Of a DNA stretch of 64,000 bases, positions 25,884-55,985 are shown one piece after another. The stretch covers positions 1 to 64,000 of the IMG/VR virus record IMGVR_UViG_3300036770_004723; one strand, written 5' to 3'. Both the position numbers and the translations under genes were made by a program. The notes below the pieces were generated by a model. The model worked only from the letters and a program-made list of their open reading frames with translations. It was not told where the DNA came from and did not search any database. Positions within the stretch are counted from its first letter, which is position 1. The number at the start of each line of letters is the position of its first letter.

Positions 25884-25892
25884 GAAGGTAAT

Positions 25893-41181: not shown

Positions 41182-41207
41182 ATGGGGCGTTAATTCGCCC
41201 CATTTTT
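41182..41207 (+). terminator. Intrinsic terminator
   Basis: ATGGGGCG-TTAATT-CGCCCCAT followed by TTTT. Confidence 0.85.
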
Positions 41208-41238
41208 GTTTCTTCATTTTACACACGAAGGAAAACCT

Positions 41239-41858: not shown

Positions 41859-42083
41859 ATGGCGATTCAGCTTACAGTACAATCTCACACACATTTACAG
41901 CAAGTACCTAGCAGTATGTGGGTAATAACGCATAATCTAGGTAGATTGCCTGCAATTGATGTTTATGTTAATCATCAAGGATCTTTGCAAAAAATTCAAC
42001 CAAAGAATATTGTAAAGCAAGATGATAATGTTTCGAAAATCTATTTCAGTCAACCTATGACTGGACAAGCGAGGGCGATCTAA
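41859..42083 (+). CDS. Small virion protein (single H-x-Q...WVITHNLG module)
   Basis: 74 aa, AAGGAG RBS. Confidence 0.75.
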   Translation: MAIQLTVQSHTHLQQVPSSMWVITHNLGRLPAIDVYVNHQGSLQKIQPKNIVKQDDNVSKIYFSQPMTGQARAI

Positions 42084-42631
42084 TGTTAATAGATGGCGCA
42101 CAACTATTAGAAGGCAGCACCTTAGAAATATCACCAATTGATTTTGGTACAGAGTTTCCGGTCAGTGCTGATGACGGCAAACGTTTCAAAAAAGAAGGAA
42201 CTGATGCAGGTAACTACGTGTATTCATTGTTTTTAAACAAATGGATAAAAGTAGATAATGTTAGTTTTAATAGCTATGATATAAGTGCAAGCATATTTGA
42301 TAGACCTAGATCTAATGATGTTGTAGTGCGACATATCGCAGCACGTACCTTTTATCTTAAAAAAGATTTAGAAGGTTCTTTAGCTAGTGCAAACTTAGCA
42401 GCAACAGATTTAACTGTGTTCGATGTTTTTGTTAAAAATGAAAATTCTAACACAAAAGTAGCTACATTAAAATTTTTAGCAGGATCTAGTATTGGTGTAT
42501 TTGAAAGCCTAGATACTCAAAATAGTATCATACTAGGTCGAGGCTACGAACTAATAATTGTAGCACCTGAAAATCGTGATGCAACTTTATCCAGTATTGC
42601 AATTACTCTATCAGGATACTTATTCGTCTGA
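42083..42631 (+). CDS. Virion structural protein
   Basis: C-terminal A..AAT..TVFDV...VATLKF.AG...G.F...L.IVAP...DATL..IAITLSG, a recurrent phage fibre-associated domain. Confidence 0.6.
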   Translation: MLIDGAQLLEGSTLEISPIDFGTEFPVSADDGKRFKKEGTDAGNYVYSLFLNKWIKVDNVSFNSYDISASIFDRPRSNDVVVRHIAARTFYLKKDLEGSLASANLAATDLTVFDVFVKNENSNTKVATLKFLAGSSIGVFESLDTQNSIILGRGYELIIVAPENRDATLSSIAITLSGYLFV

Positions 42632-42638
42632 GGTAAAT

Positions 42639-43565
42639 ATGGATCTGATTCAGTGGGACAAGTCGGCACTGTTAAATTTAATGGGAAATACAAATGGTAA
42701 TACTGAATGGTTGTTCTGTTACATGGACACAGACCAACTTGTTCCGCTGATGGAAGAAACCACTTCATTAAATGCCTTTCAGTATTTTGCACAGCATTGT
42801 ATAAGTACCAGAATATTATTGATGCGGGCTATAAATAATTCTATTGTGGATAAATTTGCTAGCATCCTATACAATGACGCTAATAGAATTTTTCACCACA
42901 GAGGAACTTTAGATGTTCCTTCTTCAAATCTTAAACGTATTGTACCTGTTAATCAGTACATAGAAAACATCAACGAACTCAGTTGGTTAAATTCAAATAT
43001 CCCCTTCTACTCTAGCGCTTTAATAAATTCAAGTCAAAGAAGTCAAAACATTTTAATTCCAATGCAGACTAAGTTAGTATTCGAATTCCACGATTTAATT
43101 GAAATAAATTCTATAAACTACTCAAATGCTTTGAGTTCAGTAGCGTCCAACCGACCGGATTTTCTTCAAATAGAATACAAAACAGATTTAGATCAGGATT
43201 GGATATCACTTCCTGAGATTACAGCTAATAACGCAAGCACGTCATTACAAACTTTTTTAATCAATGTATCATGCAAAGCCCTGAGAGTAGGTTCAAGAAA
43301 AACAAGTTTAGGTACTAACTGGTTGTTCGATACAATACAATTTAATACATTAATGGATAAGCATTTTCTAGGTGAAGAAGTTAGGTCTCTTATTATGATA
43401 CCTATTCCGAACAGCGGGCATGTCAATCCATCTATTTGGGGAACCGGTGTAAAAGTATTTGCTTTTGGCCTAAATGAATTAAAGATGAACATTCTTAAAA
43501 CAGATCGTTTTGTAGAATTAGGTGTAATAGCATCTAGATTAAGTTCAAAGGCGGTGATATTATGA
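42639..43565 (+). CDS. Array paralogue A1: scaffold + inserted discoidin-like domain
   Basis: ATG at 42639 after GAGGT; LVFEF..LIEINSINY...LQIEY...W...SCKALRV pattern. Confidence 0.65.
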   Translation: MDLIQWDKSALLNLMGNTNGNTEWLFCYMDTDQLVPLMEETTSLNAFQYFAQHCISTRILLMRAINNSIVDKFASILYNDANRIFHHRGTLDVPSSNLKRIVPVNQYIENINELSWLNSNIPFYSSALINSSQRSQNILIPMQTKLVFEFHDLIEINSINYSNALSSVASNRPDFLQIEYKTDLDQDWISLPEITANNASTSLQTFLINVSCKALRVGSRKTSLGTNWLFDTIQFNTLMDKHFLGEEVRSLIMIPIPNSGHVNPSIWGTGVKVFAFGLNELKMNILKTDRFVELGVIASRLSSKAVIL

Positions 43566-44074
43566 AAATGAATGTTGCTGCATCAAATCTAATGTTTCAA
43601 AGAAATTTATCAAGTCCTGTTGCTTTAAAATATCAAATTATTTTTGTACAAGGCTTTACTCACACTGCCTTAGAGCTAGAGAACAACTTTAATAATGTTG
43701 TTGGAGGCACGTTAACAAACATAAATACTTTAATAACTCAAATTGCAGGCAGAGGCGGAAAAGTAGTAGCTTTTGCTGAATTATTACCTAATACAGATCC
43801 TGTACTTAAAAATAACTTTGTTAATTTACTTGATTTTAATTGGAGTAAATTAAATCCAACTATTATAGCATCAGGTACACCTGACTGGTTTTTAATTTAC
43901 GTAAGAAATTCAAACGTAGCTTATAATGCGGCAGGTCCTTGTGTTTGGTCCGTGTATGGCACTATTACAAATTTTTCAGGTAACGGCGACCTTAAAGTAG
44001 GTAATAGAAATATGCTACTAGGTCAAATGTACAGCATGGGCAATTTTAGATTGAAACGTGAGGAAGTAATATGA
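43562..44074 (+). CDS. Array paralogue B1: scaffold only
   Basis: IIFVQG...SGTPDWFLIY...VYGTITNFSGNGDLKV. Confidence 0.7.
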   Translation: MKMNVAASNLMFQRNLSSPVALKYQIIFVQGFTHTALELENNFNNVVGGTLTNINTLITQIAGRGGKVVAFAELLPNTDPVLKNNFVNLLDFNWSKLNPTIIASGTPDWFLIYVRNSNVAYNAAGPCVWSVYGTITNFSGNGDLKVGNRNMLLGQMYSMGNFRLKREEVI

Positions 44075-44460
44075 GTAATAACCTTCTTCATCAGGCTAAT
44101 TTATTCGGCCAAGATTTCGATCAAAGTCTTTTCTTTTTCCGTCCAAAACAATTCACGTTTGATTTAAAATTGGATGATCTTGAAATAGTTAATACATCCA
44201 ATCCATTCTTAAATTTTAACTCTGAACCGATTAAAGTTGATTTTATAGATTCAAAAAATACAATTTTTGAATTCAATACAAACTCTTTGTCGGTGGATAT
44301 TATAAGATCTAAATCTAGTAAGTTTTCTTTTTCAGGTATGGGTATAAATTTAGGTATTTTGACAGCAAACAAAACATTAAATTCGCAGTTCACAAATACA
44401 ATAAATTCAAATATAGTGTTTGTACGTGAATCCTTTTTAAGCATTTCAATTTCAATTTGA
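44071..44460 (+). CDS. Array gene C1, ends FVRESFLSISISI
   Basis: 129 aa; C-terminus near-identical to 48833-49429. Confidence 0.7.
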   Translation: MSNNLLHQANLFGQDFDQSLFFFRPKQFTFDLKLDDLEIVNTSNPFLNFNSEPIKVDFIDSKNTIFEFNTNSLSVDIIRSKSSKFSFSGMGINLGILTANKTLNSQFTNTINSNIVFVRESFLSISISI

Positions 44461-44466
44461 GGTAAA
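44435..44466. repeat. 32-bp gene-junction direct repeat (1 mismatch), copy 1
   Basis: TTTTAAG(C/T)ATTTCAATTTCAATTTGAGGTAAA; copy 2 at 49404-49435. Confidence 0.9.
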
Positions 44467-44468
44467 AC

Positions 44469-45467
44469 ATGGAAACATTTGGATTAAATGCCACAATCAC
44501 TGAAGCAATGAAAAATACTATGCCGACTAGAGCATTAGCTTATTTATTTAACAATACTATGCCTGTGGATTTTAATTCACTTGGATTCCCACTGACAGCA
44601 AAAGGTCTTATCGAAAATTGCTCCAATGTACTAGTATTAAATAGTTACTTCGTTAATACAGAAGCCCGTAGTACATATTTTACAAGCTCTGCTTCTTTAA
44701 TTAAATCTGGTGATGTTGTAGCACAGTATCGCGGTGAACCCGTAACTGTACGTGAAGGTGCAAATGTAAGTTCTTCTTTTGCAGATCACGTCGTATGGTA
44801 TCCTAAATCAATTACCTGTAAAAATGACTACCGTGATCATAATACTTTTACTTGTTTTATGTACAAGACAAATGGTGAGTACGGTTTTGACGGCTTAGAT
44901 ACTTTTATTGCACGTACTACAGAAAACGACGAAGCAATTGTTTTTGAGTATGATACGGAACTTAGTGTTAATTGCTTTGGTATCAAGCAAAGCACAACAG
45001 TAGGTCAAGTAGCCAATCAGTTTGTTGTAGAGCGATGGGACGGCAATACGTGGGTAAGTATTGAAACAACGCCCGCCAATCAAACAGGCTATTTAATAAT
45101 TCGTTTTGCTGAAGTAACTGCTTCAAGATTCCGTATTAGGAAAATTGCTACTACAGGCGCTGTGGCTAACATTGATGTGGCGTTTGCTTACTTCGGTAAA
45201 TTTGGTTTTGCTCAAAATGAATTAAGAAAAAATGTAGTAGCGCCTAAATTTGCGATTATTGTACCAGAGCATATTTCAGCAACCACACTGAACAATTTAA
45301 TTACAAAGCAGAATGATATTTACGGAAACAGAAATTCAGATACTGATCATCTAATCATGTGCAGTGCTGGAACACCAGATCAAAATGTCTATATGCGAGT
45401 AAATTTTCCGTCAAACGACGTAAACAGTAAATACAATTTTTATCTGGTAGCAGGGCAATTACTTTAA
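44469..45467 (+). CDS. Array paralogue A2: scaffold + discoidin-like domain
   Basis: METFGLNA start; IVFEY...VNCFGIKQ...VERWDGNTW...ASRFRI; close paralogue of 52366. Confidence 0.75.
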   Translation: METFGLNATITEAMKNTMPTRALAYLFNNTMPVDFNSLGFPLTAKGLIENCSNVLVLNSYFVNTEARSTYFTSSASLIKSGDVVAQYRGEPVTVREGANVSSSFADHVVWYPKSITCKNDYRDHNTFTCFMYKTNGEYGFDGLDTFIARTTENDEAIVFEYDTELSVNCFGIKQSTTVGQVANQFVVERWDGNTWVSIETTPANQTGYLIIRFAEVTASRFRIRKIATTGAVANIDVAFAYFGKFGFAQNELRKNVVAPKFAIIVPEHISATTLNNLITKQNDIYGNRNSDTDHLIMCSAGTPDQNVYMRVNFPSNDVNSKYNFYLVAGQLL

Positions 45468-45478
45468 GGCGATTGTTT

Positions 45479-46597
45479 ATGAAAATGTTAGGACTAAAAA
45501 ACTCGTTAGCTAAAGCCTTTTCTGATACGGTAGTAGGTACTACTTTTGCAGAAGGTCACTATAATTGCACTGTATTTTTGTTTGATGAACCTATACCGAC
45601 GGATTTAAATACATTCAGGTCAGCCTCCGCCGGATATAAAAGTGATTTTAATTATGAATTAGTCAAAGATTGTGTTGGTATGTTTAATGCTAAATTCTAC
45701 TACGATCAGGCTAAAGATAAATTTGCTTTAACAAATGCAACAGGGGCATCTGAAAATCAGTCAAGTAGTTTAAGAAAAAACGATCAATACGCTCCAGAAG
45801 GTATAAGTTGCTTACTTCTACCTTCAGTTAGCCCAACATCAATGGTTACGCCAGTAGCATCAACACTCCCAACAAATACATTATATTACGCGCCATCTGT
45901 GTTGAAACAACTTCCAGCTTCATTAAGTGTTACAGATATACAAGGAACCTCAGATTTTTCTGCGATAACACAGGTAGAGAATTTTGCGCACCCTAGATTA
46001 GGATCGAATAGACCTGTAAAAAATATACTAAATTTAGTATACGGGGACCCAAACGGATTTGGATCTCACCCAAGAATTAGAATAATATCAAAATATAAAC
46101 AAGCTAAAACATTTGATAGAATTTTGATAAAGATTTCATATAGCATTAGGGTAGATGCTTGCACATTACGCATACACGCTAAATCAGGCCAAGGAGCTTT
46201 TAACCTAGTTACTGAATTTAGGTTTGTTCCGACCGAGACAGGTAAATATTTAGAAATAAACTTACCTCCATTTGAAGCAGATACTATTCATTTAAGTGGG
46301 CATTTTTTAGCGGGCGGTTTGACTCAAGGAAGTCCTGGTGTCATAAATTTAAGTGAATTGGTTTTTGGTAGATCAGGACAAACTTCTGAAGTACCGGCGT
46401 TAACCTCTAATTTCGGAATAGTAGCGTTTGGTACAAAAGATTATGGTTTAAGAATGAATGATCCTAACGGAAGATTTGTTCAATCGCATGTACCAATGTT
46501 TTTACTTGAAACTGGATCTGGTATAACAAAGCTAGATACGAATTTGAACGTACCTACAAATTTCCTCCGTCTAAATAAAAATGTAGAATTTGGATAA
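45479..46597 (+). CDS. Array paralogue A3: scaffold + beta-sandwich insert
   Basis: Likely ATG at 45479; VFLFDEPIP scaffold start; related to 53365. Confidence 0.7.
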   Translation: MKMLGLKNSLAKAFSDTVVGTTFAEGHYNCTVFLFDEPIPTDLNTFRSASAGYKSDFNYELVKDCVGMFNAKFYYDQAKDKFALTNATGASENQSSSLRKNDQYAPEGISCLLLPSVSPTSMVTPVASTLPTNTLYYAPSVLKQLPASLSVTDIQGTSDFSAITQVENFAHPRLGSNRPVKNILNLVYGDPNGFGSHPRIRIISKYKQAKTFDRILIKISYSIRVDACTLRIHAKSGQGAFNLVTEFRFVPTETGKYLEINLPPFEADTIHLSGHFLAGGLTQGSPGVINLSELVFGRSGQTSEVPALTSNFGIVAFGTKDYGLRMNDPNGRFVQSHVPMFLLETGSGITKLDTNLNVPTNFLRLNKNVEFG

Positions 46598-46601
46598 TAA
46601 C

Positions 46602-48269
46602 ATGCTGACAAATACATCTTTCGACTTATGTACATTAGGTCAATTTAGTGCGGCACAACAAACACCTTTTGATAATACTAATGTGGTAATTTTATCAATT
46701 TGGGAAGGAAGTTTGCTGTCCGAAGAAGAAATTCAAAAAATACACAATTCAAATTTTAATATAAGTCCTATATATCATCAATATGACGGATATTACATAA
46801 AAGACGTGAACAGTTATGAAGGCCAGTGGATTAAGAGCACTAATCCTAACGTGGGATTAGTTGGCATGGGTAGGCGTGAATTAGTTCGTTGCGTATTTAA
46901 TAATTTTACGAACAAAGCTTTAGGTAATACAATATACGAGAGAATTTTCCAGTTTTCAAAAGATCAGGGTCAAATAAAAGCTAAAGCGTCTGGAACAGCT
47001 CAAATGTTTAGCCTGTGTATTGTAAATCAAGACATTGATGCTAGTGCAGCAGTAAATGCAAATAATAGAGCAAACTTTTTAATATTCGGTAGCTGTGGTG
47101 ATTTTAACTCAGACGCAGATTTAAAATTGAGTAGTGTGAATATTTTGCAAGATAGTTCTGTCCGTATTGCGGATATGAGATTCGAGTTTGATTTATTTAG
47201 CTCTATCGAGTTAATAGATCCTGTTATTCCTGTGTATGAGTACAGGGAAATAATTCCTTCTATGACAGGTTATTCGAACTCCGTAGCTACAATTACGGCC
47301 AGTGGTGAATACGATCCTAGTACATATCCTGCCTGGAAAGCCTTTCAACGCAACGGGCTGCAAAATTATTACTTAGCTACTCCAAATATGTCAAATGGAA
47401 TACCCTCAGGATTTAACGTAACAAGTTCAGGTAACTATAATAGCAATTATTTACCTTCCCGACTATTCAACTCCGTAGATGCAACTACAGGGCAAGATGG
47501 GTGGTTTAGTCAATATCCTGGATCCGCACCAACAGATTTAAATCCACACTGGGCGCAGATCGAATATCCTGCTCCGGTAAGGATCGATGCGTATGTAATA
47601 CAAAATTCAGCAGATCCTGAGATCGTGAAAGCCTTAAAAGGCGGATTACTTGCTAGTAATGACGGTATAAATTGGGCAACACTTGATACTTGGGAATACA
47701 CAGCAGCTAGTGCGGTTAGTTTAGGATTAAGACCTATTAGGTTAATAAGTTCACCTGCTAAATATAAATTTTATAGACTAGCAATCTATAAAACTAATGA
47801 AGCTACGCATAATGGTGTTTTCTTAAACTATGTTAGTATACCAAGATTATATTTACTTTCTAAAGAAGTTAATGAGTATCAAACTAATCCAAGAATGTTT
47901 ACGATCACAAGTACACTAAATACTGATTCTTGGCTGTCTGAACTTAGGGCGGCATCTGAAGCAAATCCTTATTGGCTTAAGGTTGAATTTGCGGTCGCCA
48001 AAGTTGTTACTGCCTACAGAATATGGAATGGTGATAAACCTCACATGTTGAGTGGCAGTGTACAAGCAAGCAATGATAATCAGAACTGGACAACATTAGA
48101 TAGTATTGACTTGCAGACTGTGCCTACAAATTACACTTGGCGGAATCTAGTAGAGCTAAATAATTCGGTGGCATATAAATACTATAGGCTTAATATCGTC
48201 CGTATCAGTGAATGGAGTGCTGTGTGCGTAGGTGAGTGGGTTCTGTTTGAATCCATACTTGTAGAATAA
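46602..48269 (+). CDS. Array paralogue B2: scaffold + two nested discoidin (F5/8 type C-like) domains
   Basis: Likely ATG at 46602; WAQIEY...LASNDGINW...YKFYRL and WLKVEF...QASNDNQNW...YKYYRL. Confidence 0.75.
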   Translation: MLTNTSFDLCTLGQFSAAQQTPFDNTNVVILSIWEGSLLSEEEIQKIHNSNFNISPIYHQYDGYYIKDVNSYEGQWIKSTNPNVGLVGMGRRELVRCVFNNFTNKALGNTIYERIFQFSKDQGQIKAKASGTAQMFSLCIVNQDIDASAAVNANNRANFLIFGSCGDFNSDADLKLSSVNILQDSSVRIADMRFEFDLFSSIELIDPVIPVYEYREIIPSMTGYSNSVATITASGEYDPSTYPAWKAFQRNGLQNYYLATPNMSNGIPSGFNVTSSGNYNSNYLPSRLFNSVDATTGQDGWFSQYPGSAPTDLNPHWAQIEYPAPVRIDAYVIQNSADPEIVKALKGGLLASNDGINWATLDTWEYTAASAVSLGLRPIRLISSPAKYKFYRLAIYKTNEATHNGVFLNYVSIPRLYLLSKEVNEYQTNPRMFTITSTLNTDSWLSELRAASEANPYWLKVEFAVAKVVTAYRIWNGDKPHMLSGSVQASNDNQNWTTLDSIDLQTVPTNYTWRNLVELNNSVAYKYYRLNIVRISEWSAVCVGEWVLFESILVE

Positions 48270-48293
48270 ACCGTTAATTAGTTGAGGTAAATA

Positions 48294-48833
48294 ATGAAAT
48301 TTAATAAAGGTGCTATGTTAGCACATACATTCGCATACCACAGAACAGATCTTGCGAATACAGCTAGTGTTACTGTTAGCTTTTTTACAGGGCCTGTGGA
48401 TTTAACAGCGACTGAACGAAATGTTTTCAACAGTGCCGTTGTAACCGCAGTAGCTAATGGTTTAATTAGTCATAGTGCTGCACGTACAGAACTCTTGAAG
48501 ACACGTACTGAATTAGGTCAATTATTTTTACCTAATTTTACTCAACGTCGGATCGGCGCAACACCTGATGAACGCATTTGGATGTTCACTCAACGTACTG
48601 AAGAAATGACGGGCTTAGCCGCAGGCACACCAACATTTGCACTAATCAGTTTGCATGGTGGAGGCGCTGCATATCAGGCAGGTAACATTTGTCGAACTAT
48701 GTTTGCTTGTTCTGTTGGTGCAGTAGGTGAGCCAAACGTTGAATTCGAATACAATGGAAATATTGTTGTAGGTCAACGTTATAAAATAAATGATTTCCGT
48801 TTCAAGATAAATAACTTACTTGGAGAAATCTAA
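48294..48833 (+). CDS. Array paralogue B3: scaffold only
   Basis: VSFFTGP...GTPTFALI...CSVGAVGEPNVEF. Confidence 0.7.
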   Translation: MKFNKGAMLAHTFAYHRTDLANTASVTVSFFTGPVDLTATERNVFNSAVVTAVANGLISHSAARTELLKTRTELGQLFLPNFTQRRIGATPDERIWMFTQRTEEMTGLAAGTPTFALISLHGGGAAYQAGNICRTMFACSVGAVGEPNVEFEYNGNIVVGQRYKINDFRFKINNLLGEI

Positions 48834-49429
48834 TGCCAAGTGTTCACATAGCTTCGTATTATGCGAATAGGTTTGATCCTGATACATTGTTTCCAGAACT
48901 TGCTATGTTCAAGAGTTCTGATGTTTTTTACGGTACAAATTTAACAGCATTAAATATAGAGGGCTTAGAGTTTACTCCTAAATTTGAAGGCACTTCAGTA
49001 AATGCACTGTATGTTAAAGATGTTGCAACAGATCTTTTAAGTAATTTTATACCTGAAGGCAATCCATTAATATCTAATCAAGTGGTAAATACTTTATCAG
49101 TTGTTAGTTTGATGGCAACATTAGGTTTGACATACTTAACTAATCCTTTCGCTGAGTTTGATATGGGAAATCAAATGAAAGCGGATCAACAAATTTACGC
49201 AACATACTCAATAGACTACAATTTAAAAAATATTGTCAATAAGTTAGATTACATGACCGATCTAGCTTTTGAATCTAAATCAGAAAATCAAAATCAATTT
49301 GTTCATGCAGGATACAAATTTTTTCTGATCAATACAATCGAACCAATGGAATCTTCTTTTATATCCAATTCTATCCCTAGTCCGGTTTTCATTAGAGAAT
49401 CTGTTTTAAGTATTTCAATTTCAATTTGA
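48833..49429 (+). CDS. Array gene C2, ends FIRESVLSISISI
   Basis: 198 aa; shares C-terminal motif and DNA with C1. Confidence 0.7.
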   Translation: MPSVHIASYYANRFDPDTLFPELAMFKSSDVFYGTNLTALNIEGLEFTPKFEGTSVNALYVKDVATDLLSNFIPEGNPLISNQVVNTLSVVSLMATLGLTYLTNPFAEFDMGNQMKADQQIYATYSIDYNLKNIVNKLDYMTDLAFESKSENQNQFVHAGYKFFLINTIEPMESSFISNSIPSPVFIRESVLSISISI

Positions 49430-49435
49430 GGTAAA
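49404..49435. repeat. 32-bp gene-junction direct repeat, copy 2
   Basis: Matches 44435-44466 at 31 of 32 positions; spans stop codon and next RBS. Confidence 0.9.
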
Positions 49436-49437
49436 GT

Positions 49438-50382
49438 ATGTTTATATTAGGTGAGAACGCACACGCATCGAGTATTTTAGCGCAAGCTGGAACTCAATGG
49501 AATTTGTTTTTATTTACAGGTACTGCCCCTACCTCAGTAGATAATGTTCCATTCAACATCAGTAATATGCAAGAAATTTATGCAAATGCTGTTGCAGGTT
49601 TACGTTTGTTAGGTGTCAACAGCACAATGTACGGACAAGAATTAATTGCATTTGAAAACGTTGCACAACTGTTTGCCTTAAAAATGCACGGCGCACGTAC
49701 AACCAACGGCATTGCAGGTATTCAATTATTACCTCAAAATATTACAAGTAACATTGCAGGTCTTGAAAAACCCGCAGGCTACGTAAACGGATTAGAGAAC
49801 AATCCTTTAGCTAATGCAACAGCTTCAACGCACTTACTGGCCAATAACTGGATCGAGTACGATTTTGGTACAGATGTGAGTGTTAATCGTGTACTATTCG
49901 GTAATAACTCTAATACTGCACGTAATGCTACTAGTATGGCAATTGAATATTTTGATGGTAATGCTTGGCAGATAGCTGCCAATAACATTGCGATTAAAAC
50001 ATATGTGGCCGCAGGGATTGAAAGCAATTTCGCACCAATAACAGCACAACGTTGGAGAATTCGTTTCCTGAATGATACAGGTACAGTAGTCTCTAATACA
50101 TTAATCTACAACTTTTTGCGTTTCTTTGGTGCAGAAGTTCCTGTAGATGTTATGTCAAAAGAAAATTTAGATTTTACTTGGGCTATGTTGGTTCCTGCTC
50201 AACCTACTGTAGCATCCATATATGAAAATTTGTTTGCTCAACGTGTTCCTGCTTTTATTGTCAGTGCTGGAGGACCTGTTGATGGAGCAACCGCACTATT
50301 AAATAGAAAACGTGCAACTATTAACGACATTATTAGTTGTGTAAGTTTAAAAGTTAAAACAGCTGTAACTGACGAGGTTTAA
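49438..50382 (+). CDS. Array paralogue A4: scaffold + discoidin-like domain
   Basis: LFLFTGTAP; WIEYDFG..VSVNRV...IEYFDGNAW...TAQRWRIRF; FTWAMLVP...VSAGGP. Confidence 0.8.
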   Translation: MFILGENAHASSILAQAGTQWNLFLFTGTAPTSVDNVPFNISNMQEIYANAVAGLRLLGVNSTMYGQELIAFENVAQLFALKMHGARTTNGIAGIQLLPQNITSNIAGLEKPAGYVNGLENNPLANATASTHLLANNWIEYDFGTDVSVNRVLFGNNSNTARNATSMAIEYFDGNAWQIAANNIAIKTYVAAGIESNFAPITAQRWRIRFLNDTGTVVSNTLIYNFLRFFGAEVPVDVMSKENLDFTWAMLVPAQPTVASIYENLFAQRVPAFIVSAGGPVDGATALLNRKRATINDIISCVSLKVKTAVTDEV

Positions 50383-50383
50383 T

Positions 50384-50923
50384 ATGATATTAGCTACTGA
50401 TGCAATGATTCCACTGATGAATCAGGCTCCAATTATTGGCGTAACTCACCGCAAACTATTAACTATGTATGATGGGAGTATGGTGACTAAAGCAGACATA
50501 GAAGCTGCTTTATACTCAACAGTAAGCGGTAGCGGTATTATGAATGGTACTACACGAGGGCAGTATCGCCAAGATCTAATTCATAATCTTATACTGGCAA
50601 AAGGTGGGATACTACGAGGTTTCATTAATTACGCAGCTGCTTTAACTCCGCAAATGAACGGTGCCAAACGTTTACGTTTTCCTTTGAGTGAACGTAATGA
50701 AGAACTTACTAAGTCAGCTGTAGGTAATGTTACGTTTTTCACTATGGCAATTGTAGGGAATAATGTGGCTAATCCAACCACTAACACAGCGGTTTATTGG
50801 TTAGGTGTCGGCACTGTTGGTGTTCCAGGTAGTGGCGCAGATATGGAACTATTCGGTGCTGCAATTGACAACACTCGCGCAGTTCGTGCTAATGATTTAA
50901 TATTTGATTTTAGTGGAGTTTAA
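50384..50923 (+). CDS. Array paralogue B4: scaffold only
   Basis: LTMYDG...GNVTFFTM...GTVGVPGSGADMEL. Confidence 0.75.
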   Translation: MILATDAMIPLMNQAPIIGVTHRKLLTMYDGSMVTKADIEAALYSTVSGSGIMNGTTRGQYRQDLIHNLILAKGGILRGFINYAAALTPQMNGAKRLRFPLSERNEELTKSAVGNVTFFTMAIVGNNVANPTTNTAVYWLGVGTVGVPGSGADMELFGAAIDNTRAVRANDLIFDFSGV

Positions 50924-50924
50924 T

Positions 50925-51818
50925 ATGTTGATCCACAACGGCGCTAACGCAATGCAAAGTATACAAGATTATTGCGGCCCTAATTGGCAAATATTTTTTA
51001 TGGATTCTCATGTATTTGGTGAATCTGTACCAACAAAACTAAGTGATTTAGTTTTTGATCCTTCTGATGTAGATCATTTATTGACAAGATCTCGGGCAGT
51101 AGTTCAAGCAACTTCTAACATTGTGAATGGGGTACTTTCATTTACCCATAGTTCATCACTTGTTAGTTGCAGACAAAACGGCTTGCCTGTTCAAAATACA
51201 ATGCAAGATTCTATACCTCTTTATAGTGTGGCACCTACTAATGTAAAAGCAGGTGGAGGTAGAACCCAATTAACTTTAGCTGAAAGATTGGCCTTACTAA
51301 ATGATGATAATGTCGGTACATCTTTTCCACTAAATGCTTTACCTCAAACTTTAGTTTTTGATTGTATTCCAAACAATATTAAATTTGTTGAAATTGAATT
51401 CGGTACTCAAATTCCAATCTTTGATATTGTTACTGAATCCGTTGCTTCCGGTGCTATGCAACATACAAAAACTTTAGTAGGCAGCTCAAGATACAGAATA
51501 GATAATGTTCGAGATGATATTAAACAAGTAACATTGTCTTTCGGTCAATCACAAACAATATTCGAAGTGCGTGCAATTAGATTTTTCACTGACCAAATTA
51601 TTGCGGATTCTGTTGCCGAATTTGATTACGCTATCTTACGTCCAGTATCTTGGAATACTGCTATTACAGGGATTAATGCTCCGGCTCCTTACCTGTTGAT
51701 TAGTTGTGGAGGACCTATGAGTAATGCGGAACTACGAACCAACCGTCAAACTTATAAACCTAATGATATTGTTTCATTAATGCACTTACAATTAAAACCT
51801 CAAATTCTGGAGATCTAA
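50925..51818 (+). CDS. Array paralogue A5: scaffold + beta-sandwich insert
   Basis: ATG at 50925 after GGAG; FDYAILRP...ISCGGPMSNAEL scaffold end. Confidence 0.7.
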   Translation: MLIHNGANAMQSIQDYCGPNWQIFFMDSHVFGESVPTKLSDLVFDPSDVDHLLTRSRAVVQATSNIVNGVLSFTHSSSLVSCRQNGLPVQNTMQDSIPLYSVAPTNVKAGGGRTQLTLAERLALLNDDNVGTSFPLNALPQTLVFDCIPNNIKFVEIEFGTQIPIFDIVTESVASGAMQHTKTLVGSSRYRIDNVRDDIKQVTLSFGQSQTIFEVRAIRFFTDQIIADSVAEFDYAILRPVSWNTAITGINAPAPYLLISCGGPMSNAELRTNRQTYKPNDIVSLMHLQLKPQILEI

Positions 51819-51819
51819 T

Positions 51820-52314
51820 ATGATTGCACTATCTCCAACAATGAAACAGTTGTTGTCAGCCAAATACGAACAAAGTAATTCAAGTAAAAAAGTAATGTGG
51901 GTTTTTAGTGGCAATATTCCAACTAAAAATCAAATTACAGCTTTAGTTCAATCTGATGGAACTGTAAGCTCAAATGCGTTGAAAGCTTTAGGTACATTAA
52001 GACTTAGCGTAGCTTATCCTGCAACTGTATTGCCTAGAAAAGTAAATGCAGATTTACTTCGGTGGGAACTAGCTCAAAGAAACGAAGCTTTTACAACTCA
52101 CTCACCTGGAGTAGCTAATTGGTTTGTATTCATGTATGTGGCTACAAATATTAATGAACCTGCTTACAGTACTGATGCTAAAATATACCAAGCCTTTATA
52201 GGGGCAGTCGGTGACATAGGTACGCCAAATGTAGATATGGAATTGTTAGGTGGTCAAGTTGAATCCGATAAGATCTATAAGACTACAGATTTCGAGATCA
52301 AAACATTAGCCTAA
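51820..52314 (+). CDS. Array paralogue B5: scaffold only
   Basis: WVFSGNIP...GVANWFVFM...GAVGDIGTPNVDMEL; close to B4. Confidence 0.75.
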   Translation: MIALSPTMKQLLSAKYEQSNSSKKVMWVFSGNIPTKNQITALVQSDGTVSSNALKALGTLRLSVAYPATVLPRKVNADLLRWELAQRNEAFTTHSPGVANWFVFMYVATNINEPAYSTDAKIYQAFIGAVGDIGTPNVDMELLGGQVESDKIYKTTDFEIKTLA

Positions 52315-52318
52315 ATAC

Positions 52319-52344
52319 TTAGGTGGGTAAGTTTACCCACCTAA
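52319..52344. other. Perfect 12-bp inverted repeat (hairpin) between array genes
   Basis: TTAGGTGGGTAA-GT-TTACCCACCTAA, with no clear U-tract. Confidence 0.7.
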
Positions 52345-52365
52345 CTCAATTTGACGGGTAGTTAT

Positions 52366-53352
52366 ATGGAAACATTTGGATTAAATGCTAGCATTGTGGC
52401 TGGTATACAAAACATATATGGCAGCAGCGGCGTAGTTTATCTATTTGACTCTGACATGCCTGAAAATTTTAACCAGATAGATACTAAGTTTCTTATTGAA
52501 AATAGTAGACTCATTAGTTCAGTAAACTTGAGTGCAAAACCAAATACTTCTTATCTATCAATTACATCTAAAGGTAACTATGTAAAAAATGCAGATGTTA
52601 TAGCAAAATATAAAGGTGAACCTGCTATATATTTCGATGGTACAAAGAATTTTACAGCGTACCCAGATCATTTAGTTTATTACCCTAAATCTATTACCTG
52701 CAAAAATGATGATAGAGATCATCAAACTTTATTAAACTTCATGTACAAACAAGTTGATGATTATGGATACACTGGATTAGATACAAATATACTAAGGCAC
52801 GTAGAGGACGGTGAATTTATTGTTTTTGAATACGATCAAACAGTAGAGGTCAATTGCTTTGGTGTTAAACAAGATTCTGCTAACGGCACTCAGTTTATAA
52901 AATTAGATTTAGAGTATTGGGATCAAAATACATGGATACCCATTACAAGCACACCAAATGAAATAAATGGATACTATATTATAAAATTCAATGCAGTTAC
53001 CTCAAATAAATTCAGATTGCGTAAATCAATTTCAGCAGGAACTGCCACTGTTAAGATCAAGGTTGCTTTTGCATATTTTGGTAAAATTGATTACATATTG
53101 TCCGACATTCGTATAAATATCTCTGAAATGAAATGGGGTATGTTAATGCCAGATCCTTTAAGTTCTTACCTAAATAATGCTATCCAAAAACAAAATGATG
53201 TTTATAGTCAGATTAACCAAGATACAAAACATTACATATTGTGCAGTGCAGGTACAATGGATGCAAATAAAGAATTAAAGTTGTCTACAAAAAATTTGAA
53301 TTCTGGTTCAGATAGATACGGACAGACTTTAATTTTAGGTCAAATAGGTTAA
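52366..53352 (+). CDS. Array paralogue A6 (duplicate of A2)
   Basis: METFGLNA start, YPKSITCKND.RDH, VNCFGVKQ; first 23 nt identical to 44469-44491. Confidence 0.8.
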   Translation: METFGLNASIVAGIQNIYGSSGVVYLFDSDMPENFNQIDTKFLIENSRLISSVNLSAKPNTSYLSITSKGNYVKNADVIAKYKGEPAIYFDGTKNFTAYPDHLVYYPKSITCKNDDRDHQTLLNFMYKQVDDYGYTGLDTNILRHVEDGEFIVFEYDQTVEVNCFGVKQDSANGTQFIKLDLEYWDQNTWIPITSTPNEINGYYIIKFNAVTSNKFRLRKSISAGTATVKIKVAFAYFGKIDYILSDIRINISEMKWGMLMPDPLSSYLNNAIQKQNDVYSQINQDTKHYILCSAGTMDANKELKLSTKNLNSGSDRYGQTLILGQIG

Positions 53353-53364
53353 TAAGGTGAGCGT

Positions 53365-54954
53365 ATGAAACATATAGGTATAATGGAAAGTGGTCTAAAT
53401 TCCATGATTCAAAATAAGTCTACAGCGGTAGGTCTAGTATCTAGTGCTATGGTGGAAAACTGTGCACTTTATTTGTTTAAAGGTAAACAGCCTGACTTTA
53501 ACGATCTCGATCTTAAAATTCAAGCATCTAATTCAGAAGGTTTGAAATCTTTTTTGATTTCCCAGTCAGATGTTAGAATACCCTTCAAACTTAAAACATC
53601 TAAATTTGGAAATCAAATAAGACTGAGTTTAGATAATGCTTCTCACGACATAAGCACAAACAGAGATAGAGTATCAAAGTTTCCTGTAGATTTAAGTGCC
53701 GAATCTTACCAAGATATTATCCCATTAATGAATTCTAATAGTCAGAACGGTTTTAACATAACTGTTTCCAGTATGGCAGTATCTAACCCAGGATTCAAGG
53801 CGTTCCAAAAAACAACCGAACCTTTTCCATCTTTTGGCTGGCTAAGTGCTTTTGTTTCTACCAATTATAATGTTTTTTCTGTACCTGAATGGATTCAAGT
53901 AGAGTTCCCCTCCGCCGAAGTAGTAAATGCTTTTTCTATTAGAAACGGATCAGAATCAAATATAGTACGAGGTAGATTAATAGCAAGCAACAATTTAACG
54001 GATTGGACTGATCTAAAAGATTTTTCTCCCAGCAAAACAGGTTACGCGATATCCCCTAAATTTATTTTTGAAAATAATACAGCATTTAAATACTATAGGC
54101 TAAATATATTCGAAACATCTGAAAACAGTAGAGTAGGTGTAGGTGAATTTCAATTATTCAAGGCAATAGGTAAAGTAAATGGTATAATGTATGGAATCAA
54201 TAACTATAGAATTCAATTTAATGTCCCTACATCAACACCTATCTTAAGTTTGCCTGTCATAGTGCCATCTGCGTATGAAAACCTACAAACATTTTACGAA
54301 AAATCTGTTCTTTCCGGTGCAGTTCGTATAGATCAATATAACAGATTTAGTAATATGGGTCTTATGGCAGGAGAACTGGGAGATTTACGTTACGCACAAT
54401 CGGGTGAGCAGTATGAAAATAGAGGAACTGCTTTAGCCTTAAGAACGGATCAAGTAGTAGATGCCAATTGTATAGTAATGTACATAATGCACACCCACTG
54501 GCCAAGAGCTACAGCACCACTTAGATTTTTCATACACGATGAACAAGACGTAATTCATGAAATTCCTTTAGCGGATTATGAAGTTAATAAATACGTGAAA
54601 ATTAATTTCCCGCGTAAGATGGTTAAAGGTATATCCGTATATTCAAGAGGCGTTGAATCAAGACAAACAATATCAGGCATGAGATTCTGTTATTTTAATG
54701 TACTTACCTTAGGCTTGGACGTAGCGGATTCTTCTGTATTTCAAAATGAAGTAGATTACACAGCAGCTTTATTGGTTATTGACGAAGATTCTACAACTAG
54801 ATCTTCCATACATGTCCCTCCAATGTTAGTTATGTCAGTAGGAAATTCTGAAAGCAACGCCGAAGTTATATTAGATAATGTTTTCGGTAAAATAGTAAAT
54901 TCTTCAGCAGTATTGTCCTCTAAGATTTTAGATTTACCTTTGCTAGGAAGTTAA
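53365..54954 (+). CDS. Array paralogue A7: scaffold + discoidin + A3-like insert
   Basis: LYLFKGKQP; WIQVEF...IASNNLTDW...FKYYRL; KYVKINFP matches KYLEINLP in A3. Confidence 0.75.
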   Translation: MKHIGIMESGLNSMIQNKSTAVGLVSSAMVENCALYLFKGKQPDFNDLDLKIQASNSEGLKSFLISQSDVRIPFKLKTSKFGNQIRLSLDNASHDISTNRDRVSKFPVDLSAESYQDIIPLMNSNSQNGFNITVSSMAVSNPGFKAFQKTTEPFPSFGWLSAFVSTNYNVFSVPEWIQVEFPSAEVVNAFSIRNGSESNIVRGRLIASNNLTDWTDLKDFSPSKTGYAISPKFIFENNTAFKYYRLNIFETSENSRVGVGEFQLFKAIGKVNGIMYGINNYRIQFNVPTSTPILSLPVIVPSAYENLQTFYEKSVLSGAVRIDQYNRFSNMGLMAGELGDLRYAQSGEQYENRGTALALRTDQVVDANCIVMYIMHTHWPRATAPLRFFIHDEQDVIHEIPLADYEVNKYVKINFPRKMVKGISVYSRGVESRQTISGMRFCYFNVLTLGLDVADSSVFQNEVDYTAALLVIDEDSTTRSSIHVPPMLVMSVGNSESNAEVILDNVFGKIVNSSAVLSSKILDLPLLGS

Positions 54955-54956
54955 TT

Positions 54957-55985
54957 ATGAAAATTAATCACAGTTTTGCTCACAATCTTTTTAGTCCTCT
55001 GTGCTCAAAATACAAACCTAGTACGTATGGGACGTGCCTAGTAATTTCATTATGGTCAGGCACAAGTCTAACAAACAATGAACTTATTAACATTGAAAAT
55101 AATAGATCTAGCTTTAATATACCTGGTAATTTTATGGGGTTTGCTACAGAACACAGTAATAGAAAAGAATTAGCTAGATTAACTTTACCTAGTTTTTCAG
55201 ATAGATTTACTGTTAACGAAGAGGATTTTAAGTTAGCTTTTACAAAAAGAATAGAAGATTTTATTTTTGTTTCTTCTGGCACTGCTTCTTTTTTCACAAT
55301 CTTTTTTGCCCGTGACAACTTTACTGCGTACAACGGTGATATAGCTAATAACAGCGGATCTTGTTTAATATCAGGTAGTGTAGGTATTGAAGGCAGCAAC
55401 GCAGATTTGATTTTAAGTCAATTAAATATTATTGATTCTAATATAGTAATCAAGGACTTCGATTTCAAATTAATTTCTACGACTTTACAAAGATTTTGGC
55501 TATCTGCCGATCTACCCGAAGGGAATATTAGATTACCGTTATATAATATTTTAGATCAGACCACAACAGGCTGGAAAAGCTTTGCAAGATCAGGAGCAGG
55601 TAAAACAGTGTCAGATGTTGAGTGGTTAAGTTTATGGAATAACCTAACAACAGGCATCAAAATAATGGGTGACGATGGCAGGGTAGCTTTCTTATCTGTA
55701 GATAAATTAAAACCTTCAGGTGTCGATGATTTAACTAAAACAATAAAAACGCCAGCGAATTACGACTGGACAAATAATAGTGCAAGTAATTATTTTTACC
55801 ATCATGAAATCGTAGGGAATAATGCAGCTGGAGGAGATTATTCTATTTTATGTTTGACTTCAAATGCTAATGGAGGTATATGGAACGAAAGTAATAGGTT
55901 CGCTTTCATGAACTACACCAACCCAAACAATGGCATAACTTACGCAGGTAAGCCTAATTGGCCGTTTACTCTTTACATTCACTAA
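54957..55985 (+). CDS. Array paralogue B6: B2-like scaffold with a different C-terminal domain
   Basis: ISLWSG...SGTASFF...LISGSVGIEGSNADLILS matches the B2 N-half. Confidence 0.75.
   Translation: MKINHSFAHNLFSPLCSKYKPSTYGTCLVISLWSGTSLTNNELINIENNRSSFNIPGNFMGFATEHSNRKELARLTLPSFSDRFTVNEEDFKLAFTKRIEDFIFVSSGTASFFTIFFARDNFTAYNGDIANNSGSCLISGSVGIEGSNADLILSQLNIIDSNIVIKDFDFKLISTTLQRFWLSADLPEGNIRLPLYNILDQTTTGWKSFARSGAGKTVSDVEWLSLWNNLTTGIKIMGDDGRVAFLSVDKLKPSGVDDLTKTIKTPANYDWTNNSASNYFYHHEIVGNNAAGGDYSILCLTSNANGGIWNESNRFAFMNYTNPNNGITYAGKPNWPFTLYIH

What the first reader, a model, noticed from the sequence alone, without database searches (positions are those of the whole stretch)
42639..55985. 13-kb array of 13 paralogues on one scaffold with swappable inserted binding domains
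Seen: all A and B genes share an N-part (L.(F/W).G..P) and a C-part ((W/F)..L....G/S-V/A-G..G..(A)D/N-L). B1, B3, B4 and B5 are the bare ~170-aa scaffold. A types carry a discoidin-like or other beta-sandwich inserted mid-scaffold; B2 and B6 carry C-terminal additions. Order is A-B-C-A-A-B-B-C-A-B-A-B-A-A-B, with visible block duplications (A2-A3-B2 ~ A6-A7-B6; A4-B4 ~ A5-B5). Established: F5/8C (discoidin/CBM32) domains bind glycans. Inference: a combinatorial, hetero-oligomeric receptor-binding apparatus displaying many glycan specificities.
Basis: partly seen in the sequence, partly recalled or inferred. Interest (0 to 1): 0.75.

Follow-up and report, generated by a model that had tools for sequence, protein, structure and literature searches.

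The report
Jumbo-phage array of lectin-bearing garland-like proteins
A 13-kb run of 15 genes in a jumbo phage's tail module encodes 13 relatives of one small scaffold, half of them carrying sugar-binding domains; they probably pair up to form a multi-lectin host-recognition structure at the tail, though no experiment has yet shown them in the virion.

Summary
Window 42639-55985 carries 15 tightly packed + strand genes: 7 'A' (297-529 aa), 6 'B' (164-555 aa) and 2 'C'.

- **Shared scaffold.** The six B proteins are one family (phrog_17152, function unknown). All A proteins are one superfamily. Their N- and C-terminal parts align collinearly with the two ends of B (hhalign 96% and 75%).
- **Structure models.** In the AlphaFold model of A4, a CBM32/discoidin domain (Z about 15) is inserted into the scaffold. 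The B4 model best matches the 139-aa chain of PDB 9rkv, inferred from its size to be the 'garland' protein of Agrobacterium phage 7-7-1 (Z 8.5).
- **Pairing.** A4 and B4 are predicted to form a scaffold-to-scaffold heterodimer (ipSAE 0.72, controls 0.00).
- **Relatives.** They keep the array between the same tail-module gene and a lysis-like cassette. Gene number varies and binding domains are swapped (F5/8C versus Laminin_G_3). Homologous arrays, all annotated 'hypothetical', occur in Erwinia phages Yoloswag and Y3 and in phage NCTB.

Best reading: baseplate-peripheral A-B dimers that display several lectin domains.

Not shown: presence in the virion, glycan binding, and the role of C.

Verdict: a new variant of a known kind, of moderate to high interest.

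The parts
42083..42631 (+). g0: conserved 182-aa gene directly upstream of the array. It is the left boundary of the array in all syntenic relatives.
   Evidence: phrog_22757 at 8e-31, with weak tail-fibre PHROGs. Orthologues lie before the array in L004, L006, L017 and L018; by position and size in Yoloswag (gp85), PaBG and NCTB.
42639..43565 (+). A1 (308 aa): divergent A-type protein. Its middle has a weak galactose-binding-like signal.
   Evidence: Full-length hhalign to the A4-type alignment gives 89.5%, E 2e-6. There is no direct match to B. Sad1_UNC is sub-threshold. Orthologues are 26-62% identical.
43562..44074 (+). B1 (170 aa): bare scaffold. It overlaps A1 by 4 nt.
   Evidence: BLASTP to B3 at 1e-5. 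It is part of the B alignment and HMM.
44071..44460 (+). C1 (129 aa): small fast-evolving protein with a conserved N-terminal motif and a conserved C-terminal strand (…RESFLSISISI).
   Evidence: Orthologues are 33-43% identical. No family match.
44469..45467 (+). A2 (332 aa): A-type protein whose insert resembles that of A4.
   Evidence: 42% identical to A6 and E 2e-6 to A4. N and C parts match B in register.
45479..46597 (+). A3 (372 aa): A-type protein with an unidentified insert.
   Evidence: hhalign to the relatives' A3-position family gives 61%, E 8e-5 over 330 columns. Matches to B are weak but in register. No Pfam hit for the insert.
46602..48269 (+). B2 (555 aa): B scaffold (about the first 200 aa) followed by two F5/8C (discoidin) domains, at about nt 47361-47819 and 47919-48257.
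   Evidence: Pfam F5_F8_type_C 3.2e-11, 43.9 bits against a cut-off of 28.2, in 2 stretches. phrog_17152 matches the N-terminal part. Relatives carry Laminin_G_3 at this position instead.
48294..48833 (+). B3 (179 aa): bare scaffold.
   Evidence: phrog_17152 at 1.3e-6. Orthologues are 83-93% identical in L004-L006, lower in L007, L017 and L018.
48833..49429 (+). C2 (198 aa): second C-type protein, ending …RESVLSISISI.
   Evidence: The ESM Atlas model has no confident fold (pTM 0.16).
49438..50382 (+). A4 (314 aa): scaffold (residues 1-87 and 238-314) with a CBM32/discoidin domain inserted at residues 88-237 (nt 49699-50148).
   Evidence: AF2 model with pLDDT 85.7 and pTM 0.86. Foldseek 7d2a_A E 1e-7. 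VIA Z 14-15 over residues 88-237. Pfam is sub-threshold.
50384..50923 (+). B4 (179 aa): bare scaffold, predicted partner of A4.
   Evidence: AF2 model with pLDDT 83. 9rkv_A at Z 8.5. Complex with A4 scores ipSAE 0.72 against 0.00 for controls.
50925..51818 (+). A5 (297 aa): A-type protein. Its insert is shorter and not identifiable by sequence.
   Evidence: A4~A5 at 1e-6. C-part to B gives 88%, E 3e-6. The Atlas gives only weak F5/8C-like features, score 0.80.
51820..52314 (+). B5 (164 aa): bare scaffold.
   Evidence: phrog_17152 at 2.3e-8. Orthologues are 84-89% identical in L004-L006, 60-69% in L007, L017 and L018.
52318..52345 (+). GC-rich hairpin in the B5-A6 spacer. In relatives it marks the end of the conserved block.
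   Evidence: Folding energy -20.5 kcal/mol, z -2.6. Relatives have hairpins of different sequence at the same place.
52366..53352 (+). A6 (328 aa): paralogue of A2 and first gene of the add-on triple.
   Evidence: 42% identical to A2. External orthologues P0187 and P0192 are 70-71% identical. Absent from L004, L005, L006, L017 and L018.
53365..54954 (+). A7 (529 aa): A-type protein with two inserted domains, an F5/8C-like domain (residues about 108-268, nt 53686-54168) and the middle domain of the A3-type family.
   Evidence: Pfam is sub-threshold, 2e-4. phrog_16348 at 4e-16. 42% identical to an F5/8C domain of B2. hhalign to the A3-type family gives 98%.
54957..55985 (+). B6 (342 aa): B scaffold (residues 1-176) followed by a C-terminal domain of about 165 aa of unknown family (nt 55512-55982).
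   Evidence: phrog_17152 at 3e-6. [quoted passage not shown] No Pfam hit.

Best explanation
The array encodes peripheral tail or baseplate proteins built on one small scaffold, the B fold of about 170 aa. This fold resembles the 'garland' proteins that wrap the distal ends of tail fibres in Agrobacterium phages 7-7-1 and Milano.

Each A protein is the same scaffold with one or two beta-sandwich domains spliced into a loop between its N- and C-terminal halves. Some B proteins carry such domains at their C-terminus. Where these domains can be identified, they are CBM32/discoidin lectin domains.

An A and the B encoded just after it are made together, since their genes are 4 nt apart or less. They pair through their scaffolds into a pseudo-symmetric heterodimer, which leaves the lectin domains free.

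Several different dimers, perhaps linked by the C proteins through their conserved end strands, would be mounted on the tail-fibre or baseplate periphery. There they would give the phage a set of low-affinity sugar-binding sites for first contact with the host surface. Phage lineages change this set by gaining, losing and re-domaining cassettes.

Shown: paralogy, the shared scaffold, the inserted CBM32 fold, cassette variation, and genomic placement.

Predicted in silico: the B fold, its likeness to the garland protein, and the A4-B4 dimer.

Inferred: virion location, sugar binding, higher-order assembly, and the role of C.
For: **Family structure**
-.

**B4 model**
- pLDDT 83.
- Best PDB match 9rkv_A: Foldseek probability 1.0, E 4.7e-3.
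- VIA Z 8.5 over 123 of 139 residues. It ranks first both in the re-ranking and in the Foldseek-independent scan of 48,161 chains. Four of the next five hits are phage tail or baseplate chains and one is a phage neck chain.
- PMC12796354 and PMC10811340 describe garland proteins as small dimers around the distal ends of tail fibres, with a T4 gp8 / A511 gp105-like fold.

**A4 model**
- pLDDT 85.7, with a CBM32 domain at residues 88-237.

**A4+B4 complex**
- ipSAE 0.72 median and 0.85 best, against 0.00 in three controls.
- The interface uses only scaffold residues, and homologous elements on both sides: the N-termini (residues 1-17 in each) and A4 265-276 against B4 138-144.

**Gene order and context**
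- A followed directly by B recurs in every locus examined.
- The array lies after the baseplate-wedge, tail and collagen-like fibre genes, the 566-aa virion structural protein, and a terminator at 41.2 kb. A lysis-like cassette follows it.

**Domain swaps and gene-number variation**
-.
Against: - No homologue has been detected in a virion. All are 'hypothetical protein' in 57 cultured-phage records.
- The tool notes that Z 8.5 is near the level unrelated models can reach. The B profile has no sequence match to any solved chain.
- Direct fold scores to A511 gp105 (Z 3.7) and a phi812 baseplate chain (Z 3.9) are weak.
- The complex score cannot tell cognate partners from non-cognate ones, or heterodimers from homodimers.
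- Only B2 passes the Pfam cut-off for F5/8C. The inserts of A1, A3 and A5 are unidentified.
- The A4 insert is no more variable than its scaffold among orthologues, so there is no sign of an arms race at that domain.
Confidence: 0.55

Rival explanations
1. These are virion decoration proteins mounted elsewhere, on the tail sheath 'hairs', the neck or the capsid. They would hold the phage to environmental or host-associated polysaccharide matrices, as Ig-like or lectin-like capsid decorations do, and would not be part of the baseplate receptor-binding complex.
For: - Relatives belong to the 'hairy Myoviridae' (PMC6143709).
- Lectin domains sit on a small oligomerising scaffold.
- One weaker fold match of B4 is to a neck protein (9c39_K, Z 5.1).
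Against: - Lu11 (reported as hairy) and PaBG (grouped with the hairy Myoviridae) have no B-profile match, while Y3 and Yoloswag do. The array therefore does not track that morphology.
- The best fold match is a tail-fibre-associated protein.
- The array lies at the distal end of the tail/fibre gene block.
Confidence: 0.2
2. These are non-structural proteins made late in infection, such as assembly chaperones for the many fibre proteins. Alternatively they are cytoplasmic or released lectins that act on host envelope precursors or debris, for example to stop progeny from sticking to lysed cells.
For: - No virion evidence exists.
- Small genes downstream of fibre genes are often chaperones (general knowledge).
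- The array directly adjoins the lysis-like genes.
Against: - Thirteen paralogues carrying carbohydrate-binding domains are unlike known fibre chaperones.
- Every fold match that stands out is a virion component.
- The sequences read show no obvious N-terminal signal peptide or membrane segment; this was not checked with a prediction tool.
Confidence: 0.15
3. The A/B resemblance is convergent or an alignment artefact. A and B would be two unrelated families that merely alternate.
For: - Direct pairwise BLAST between A and B proteins of the window is not significant.
- A1 and A3 show no significant direct match to B.
Against: - Two independent collinear profile matches: C-part 96%, E 3.7e-9, and N-part 75%, E 2.7e-5.
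- NCTB A-types and the A3-type family give the same result.
- One relative's A-type protein matches B2 by BLASTP at 45% identity (E 7.6e-4).
- The order of secondary-structure elements in the A4 scaffold matches B4.
- The predicted dimer interface is pseudo-symmetric.
Confidence: 0.05

Closest known systems
Garland proteins of Agrobacterium phages 7-7-1 (gp014, PDB 9rkv) and Milano (gp125/gp127)
   Same: - Small proteins of about 140-180 aa, with the best fold match to B4 (Z 8.5).
- They form homo- or heterodimers of paralogues.
- They are encoded beside receptor-binding protein genes. In Milano an odd small gene (gp126) with a predicted extended 'string' lies between the paralogues, which recalls C here (PMC10811340, PMC12796354).
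   Different: - No detectable sequence similarity.
- Those phages have 1-2 garland genes without inserted domains. Here there are 13 paralogues, most carrying inserted or appended beta-sandwich or lectin domains.
- Location in the virion is unknown here.
T4 gp8 / Listeria phage A511 gp105 / Staphylococcus phage 812 'arm segment' / Goslar gp32 (baseplate wedge to tail-fibre-network connectors)
   Same: Dimeric beta-rich modules that string end to end and link receptor-binding proteins to the baseplate. The literature states that garland proteins share this fold (PMC10811340, PMC13742148). B4 gives weak direct matches: 6hhk_B at Z 3.7 and 9euf_b at Z 3.9.
   Different: - Direct fold scores are weak.
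- T4 gp8 did not appear among the matches.
- None of the Pfam scans returned a T4 gp8 family hit.
- Those proteins are single-copy structural connectors without lectin inserts.
Chimalliviridae DUF7941 filament proteins (Goslar gp22/gp23 and 8 paralogues)
   Same: A jumbo-phage paralogue family built on a common oligomerising module, with some members fused to carbohydrate-binding domains. They are proposed to form baseplate-anchored host-recognition filaments (PMC13742148).
   Different: - An unrelated module, and that paper reports it only in chimalliviruses.
- Its domains are appended, not inserted.
- Those proteins were found in virions by mass spectrometry. No such data exist here.
CBM-bearing distal tail proteins of lactic-acid-bacteria siphophages ('evolved' Dit, BppA)
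   Different: A different scaffold fold, different phage type and host, and single genes rather than a 13-member array.
F5/8 type C (discoidin) / CBM32 domains
   Same: - B2 passes the Pfam cut-off twice over.
- The A4 insert matches CBM32 structures at Z 14-15 and Foldseek E 1e-7.
   Different: - Ligand-binding residues were not examined.
- The A4 and A7 sequences score below the Pfam cut-off.
- Insertion within another domain is unusual for CBM32.

Membership tests
Phage garland proteins (7-7-1 gp014; Milano gp125/gp127) | The fold of the solved garland chain | tested here: met
   B4 model against 9rkv_A: Foldseek probability 1.0, E 4.7e-3, TM 0.47/0.58. VIA Z 8.5 with 123 of 139 residues aligned, first in two independent rankings. 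That chain A is gp014 is inferred from its 139-aa length, against fibre proteins of more than 298 aa in that entry (PMC12796354).
Phage garland proteins (7-7-1 gp014; Milano gp125/gp127) | Detectable sequence homology | tested here: not met
   The B profile against all PDB sequences gives no relevant hit at E up to 10.
Phage garland proteins (7-7-1 gp014; Milano gp125/gp127) | Forms homo- or heterodimers of paralogues | tested here: met
   In silico only. A4+B4 score ipSAE 0.72 against 0.00 in controls, with a scaffold-only pseudo-symmetric interface. Homodimers and non-cognate pairs were not tested.
Phage garland proteins (7-7-1 gp014; Milano gp125/gp127) | Sits around the distal ends of tail fibres or spikes in the virion | not testable with these tools
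   No virion proteome or map exists for this phage or its relatives. All homologues are annotated 'hypothetical'.
T4 gp8 / A511 gp105 connector fold | Fold similarity to gp8 or gp105 | tested here: inconclusive
   6hhk_B scores Z 3.7 and phi812 9euf_b scores Z 3.9. T4 gp8 is not listed. The link rests mainly on the statement in PMC10811340 that garland proteins share this fold.
phrog_17152 (unknown function) | HMM match | tested here: met
   The N-terminal part of B2 (1e-9), B3 (1e-6), B4 (2e-7), B5 (2e-8) and B6 (3e-6) match. B1 has no hit at E<=0.01 and joins through BLASTP and the family HMM.
F5/8 type C / CBM32 | Pfam gathering score | tested here: met
   B2 scores 43.9 bits against a cut-off of 28.2, in two stretches. 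It is not met by A4 (PF22633, 25.9 against 27.8) or by A7 (22.5 against 27.8).
F5/8 type C / CBM32 | Beta-sandwich fold of CBM32 | tested here: met
   A4 residues 88-237 match 7d2a_A at E 1e-7 and TM 0.78 by target, and score Z 14-15 against many CBM32 and discoidin chains.
F5/8 type C / CBM32 | Sugar- or Ca-binding residues, and actual glycan binding | not tested
   No residue-level comparison was made. Binding would need glycan arrays.
Chimallivirus DUF7941 filament family | DUF7941 module | tested here: not met
   The Pfam scans of all 15 proteins returned no DUF7941 family. I did not check that the library copy holds that model. It is treated only as a functional analogue.

The most novel reading that the evidence does not exclude
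The array builds a heteropolymeric 'beads-on-a-string' lectin garland or filament. Cognate A-B heterodimers would be the beads. The C proteins would be the strings, docking through N- and C-terminal strands that evolve in concert within each genome. Whole cassettes (A-B, A-A-B) would move between phages through conserved junction sequences, giving a plug-in system for re-programming glycan recognition across a whole clade of jumbo phages.
Probability: 0.25. Interest if true: 0.8.

Novelty: new variant of a known kind. Interest (0 to 1): 0.62.

Why it matters
Host recognition by jumbo phages is poorly understood. This clade includes phages of Erwinia amylovora, Dickeya solani and Yersinia enterocolitica that are being considered for biocontrol.

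About 5% of their genomes (13-15 kb) is taken up by this array, and every gene in it is annotated 'hypothetical'.

Three results turn the array into a concrete, testable model of a multi-lectin adsorption device:
- the scaffold resembles a recently solved tail-fibre 'garland' protein;
- carbohydrate-binding modules are spliced into the scaffold;
- A-B pairs are predicted to dimerise.

The model also explains where host-range variation in these phages may reside. In addition, it gives a natural example of domain insertion into a small oligomerising scaffold, which could be useful for protein display.

Tried and rejected
- **DNA searches.** megablast and blastn of the array and of a tail gene against 50,697 phage records found nothing. 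tblastn with B3 also found nothing. The family only became visible in cultured phages by fold and with a Yoloswag member as query.
- **The search for related loci.** A4 found no relatives in IMG/VR.
- **PF23140 'Gp80'.** This lead from the Atlas features has no match in the genome and was dropped.
- **Link to 'hairy' tail morphology.** Rejected, because Lu11 and PaBG lack the B family.
- **Hypervariability of the A4 lectin insert.** Not seen: insert and scaffold diverge alike.
- **Long B-profile hits.** P0023 (2452 aa) and P0146 (1651 aa) are bacterial repeat proteins whose weak per-repeat scores add up. They are not relatives.
- **C2.** No family, and no confident single-sequence fold.
- **AFDB clusters for B4.** Only unnamed small proteins.
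- **Promoter and terminator scans inside the array.** No more sites than in shuffled sequence.

Full report
**Context.** The window is the first 64 kb of a 286,584-bp IMG/VR virus record with about 34% G+C.
- Upstream of the finding lie a baseplate-wedge gene, a 1547-aa tail protein, collagen-like fibre genes and a 566-aa 'virion structural protein'.
- That last protein is 49% identical to one in phage NCTB and 42% to one in Pseudomonas phage PaBG. It is about 37% identical to those of Erwinia, Dickeya and Yersinia jumbo phages such as Yoloswag, the pEa_SNUABM series, AD1 and fHe-Yen9-02.
- The literature calls this clade a lineage of 'hairy Myoviridae' (PMC6143709).
- DNA-level searches found no close relative among 50,697 phage records.

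**The observation.**
- Orthologues in related metagenomic contigs fix five starts differently from the longest-ORF calls: A1 42639, A3 45479, B2 46602, A5 50925 and A6 52366.
- Genes are separated by -4 to +12 nt, except B2>B3 (24 nt) and B5>A6 (51 nt). Every A-to-B junction is 4 nt or less.
- A strong bidirectional terminator at 41182-41203 precedes the unit. No convincing terminator or promoter lies inside it.

**The B family.**
- BLASTP links the six B proteins.
- Five hit phrog_17152, a family of unknown function.
- An HMM built from them finds no other copy in the genome.
- A 33-sequence B profile finds 516 cluster representatives at E<=1e-3 among 1.84 billion proteins, nearly all 160-195 aa. 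Two long hits are repeat-protein artefacts.

**The A family and its link to B.** Similarities within the A group:
- A2 and A6 are 42% identical. A2~A4 and A4~A5 are weakly similar.
- Profile comparisons join the rest. The A1 family matches A4-type proteins at 89.5%, E 2e-6, over 233 collinear columns.
- A7 matches the relatives' A3-position family at 98%, and that family matches A4-type at 97.7%. NCTB A-types match A4-type at 99.7%. A3 matches the A3-position family at only 61%.

The link from A to B:
- The last 80 residues of 72 A proteins match B positions 103-170 at 96.1% probability, E 3.7e-9. Their first 85 residues match B positions 2-42 at 74.5%, E 2.7e-5.
- The two matches are collinear. 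They recur for separate A subfamilies and for the NCTB A-types.
- A1 is the exception and joins only through the other A proteins.
- One relative's A-type protein matches the C-terminal part of B2 by plain BLASTP at 45% identity.

**Structure models.**
- *B4 model.* B4, with 33 sequences, gives pLDDT 83 and pTM 0.83.
  - Its only clear PDB match is 9rkv chain A, with Foldseek probability 1.0 and E 4.7e-3.
  - VIA gives Z 8.5 with 123 of 139 residues aligned. The match ranks first both in the re-ranking and in the Foldseek-independent scan of 48,161 chains.
  - The next matches, at Z 4.7-5.3, are all phage tail, baseplate or neck chains.
- *What 9rkv is.* It is the tail-fibre map of Agrobacterium phage 7-7-1. 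By size, the 139-aa chain must be the garland protein gp014, which forms 36 dimers around the distal fibre domains (PMC12796354).
- *The Milano garland.* Paralogues gp125 and gp127 form homo- or heterodimers there. Their fold is said to resemble T4 gp8 and A511 gp105, connectors that string 'like beads' on an extended chain (PMC10811340).
- *Weaker evidence.* Direct scores of B4 to gp105 and to a phi812 baseplate chain are weak (Z 3.7, 3.9). The B profile has no sequence match in the PDB.
- *A4 model.* A4, with 40 sequences, gives pLDDT 85.7 and pTM 0.86.
  - Residues 88-237 are a CBM32/discoidin sandwich, with Foldseek E 1e-7 and Z 14-15.
  - The remaining 165 residues have the same order of helices and strands as B4.
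  - I could not superpose the two models directly.

**Domains in the other members.**
- B2 has two F5/8C domains above the Pfam cut-off.
- A7 has one below the cut-off, which is 42% identical to a B2 domain. It also has the middle domain of the A3-type family.
- The inserts of A2 and A6 resemble that of A4.
- The inserts of A1, A3 and A5 and the B6 tail have no family.

**Pairing.**
- A4+B4 score ipSAE 0.72 (median of three runs, best 0.85) against 0.00 for three controls.
- The interface uses only scaffold residues, and homologous elements on both sides: the two N-termini, and A4 265-276 against B4 138-144.
- The tool warns that close cousins of a true partner also pass. This shows that the scaffolds can pair. 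It does not show that pairing is cognate.
- Gene order agrees: a B directly follows an A in 5 of 6 cases here. The same holds in all relatives, in NCTB and in Yoloswag.

**Relatives and variation.**
- *Boundaries.* Seven metagenomic loci (L004-L009, L017, L018) show the array between the g0 orthologue and the same four small genes wherever the contig reaches those boundaries. Those four genes are two membrane proteins, a DUF1353 protein and a lipoprotein, and form a likely lysis cassette.
- *Conservation.* In L004-L006 the block B3-C2-A4-B4-A5-B5 is well conserved: its B proteins are 83-93% identical, its A proteins 69-83% and C2 44-60%. The front part varies more: A1 56-62%, C1 33-43%, and A3 is 56% identical or unrecognisable.
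- *Domain swaps in B2.* B2 is re-domained between phages.
  - Here it carries two F5/8C domains.
  - In L004, L006 and L017 it carries Laminin_G_3.
  - In L018 it is a bare scaffold.
  - The tail domain of B6 here is the terminal domain of the relatives' B2.
- *Extra or reordered genes.* L006 has an extra B-A pair. L017 has a different gene order.
- *The A6-A7-B6 triple.* It is missing from L004, L005, L006, L017 and L018, though A6 orthologues exist elsewhere at 70-71% identity. The triple sits after a hairpin that marks the end of the array in relatives. L018 and L007 carry a lone A-type gene in the same slot.
- *Cultured phages.*
  - NCTB has a homologous array of about 14 kb at another genomic position, as does contig L023.
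  - Yoloswag (gp84-gp70) and Y3 (Y3_093-079) have it in the syntenic position.
  - 57 cultured-phage records hold B homologues, all annotated 'hypothetical protein'.
  - PaBG and Lu11 have none, so the array does not explain the 'hairy' morphology.

**The C proteins.**
- C1 and C2 share only a short N-terminal motif (FDQSLFF / FDPDTLF) and the last 14 residues.
- At the DNA level, the C-end and A-start junction is a 55-nt repeat that is 82% identical.
- In the window and in L006, the two C-termini within a genome resemble each other more than they resemble their orthologues.
- C2 has no confident fold on its own.
- These points fit a partner-dependent linker, like the 'string' proposed for Milano gp126. 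This is inference only.

**Interpretation.** The best reading is a peripheral tail or baseplate assembly of A-B scaffold dimers that display CBM32 and other beta-sandwich domains, re-equipped between phages by cassette and domain exchange (confidence about 0.55).
- The rivals are decoration elsewhere on the virion, a non-structural late function, and a spurious A-B relationship. Each is weighed in its own entry.
- The closest known systems are the garland proteins (same fold, no inserts, one or two genes) and gp8/gp105-type connectors.
- The DUF7941 filament proteins of chimalliviruses are a functional analogue. They are also a paralogue family with carbohydrate-binding domains anchored at the baseplate, but they are unrelated in sequence (PMC13742148).
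- I found no paper that describes this array.

**Verdict.**
- This is a new variant of a known kind.
- The decisive missing evidence is virion proteomics and imaging of a cultured relative.

Noticed in passing
window 44428-44482 and 49397-49451: A 55-nt direct repeat (82% identical) covers the last codons of C1 or C2, the ribosome-binding site and the first codons of A2 or A4. C1 and C2 are otherwise unalignable. In the window and in L006, the two C-termini within a genome resemble each other more than they resemble their orthologues. This points to gene conversion, or to co-evolution with a shared docking site.
   Followed up: partly
window 44469-44491 and 52366-52388: A perfect 23-nt repeat lies at the starts of A2 and A6, although the two proteins are only 42% identical. 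It may be a recombination junction for cassette exchange.
   Followed up: no
window 52318-52345; L004:11931-11987, L005:5573-5625, L006:14794-14840, L018:12893-12931: A GC-rich hairpin lies just after B5 (-20.5 kcal/mol, z -2.6). Every relative has a hairpin of different sequence at the same place. In most relatives the lysis-like genes follow it. Here the A6-A7-B6 triple sits between the hairpin and those genes, and in L018 and L007 a lone A-type gene does. The site looks like an accessory slot.
   Followed up: partly
window 55995-57595: Four small + strand genes are conserved after the array in relatives: two predicted membrane proteins, a DUF1353 protein (2e-14), and a lipoprotein-like protein with a hydrophobic C-terminus. 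They probably form a lysis cassette (holin and spanin-like genes). No endolysin domain was seen among them.
   Followed up: partly
window 41182-41203: A strong bidirectional intrinsic-terminator-like hairpin (8 bp, 6 G-C pairs, T-runs on both strands) lies between the 566-aa virion protein gene and the unit that contains the array.
   Followed up: no
window 35969-36907, 39455-41155 (C-terminus), 41206-41847: Three proteins share a phrog_21918 / phrog_24148-type domain. PHROGs labels phrog_24148 'HNH endonuclease', but here it sits at the C-terminal end of fibre-like structural proteins, so the label looks misleading.
   Followed up: no
window 24378-26543 and 34652-35428: Several collagen-like (Gly-X-Y) tail-fibre genes lie in the tail module.
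   Followed up: no
L003 (PaBG 210836-230760) and L002 (NCTB 84818-83251): The site after the g0 homologue varies across the clade. PaBG has large 'adhesin' and fibrinogen-like genes there and no B family. NCTB has only small genes there, and its A/B/C array is moved to 141-155 kb.
   Followed up: partly
L023:19472-19909: A NCTB-like metagenomic contig carries an Acb1-family gene (an anti-CBASS nuclease family, by Pfam) just after its A/B/C array.
   Followed up: no
P0023, P0146: The B profile gives high summed scores on two giant bacterial repeat proteins, with 14 and 7 weak matches per protein. These are artefacts of repeat summation. The count of 516 family members therefore includes some false positives.
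   Followed up: yes
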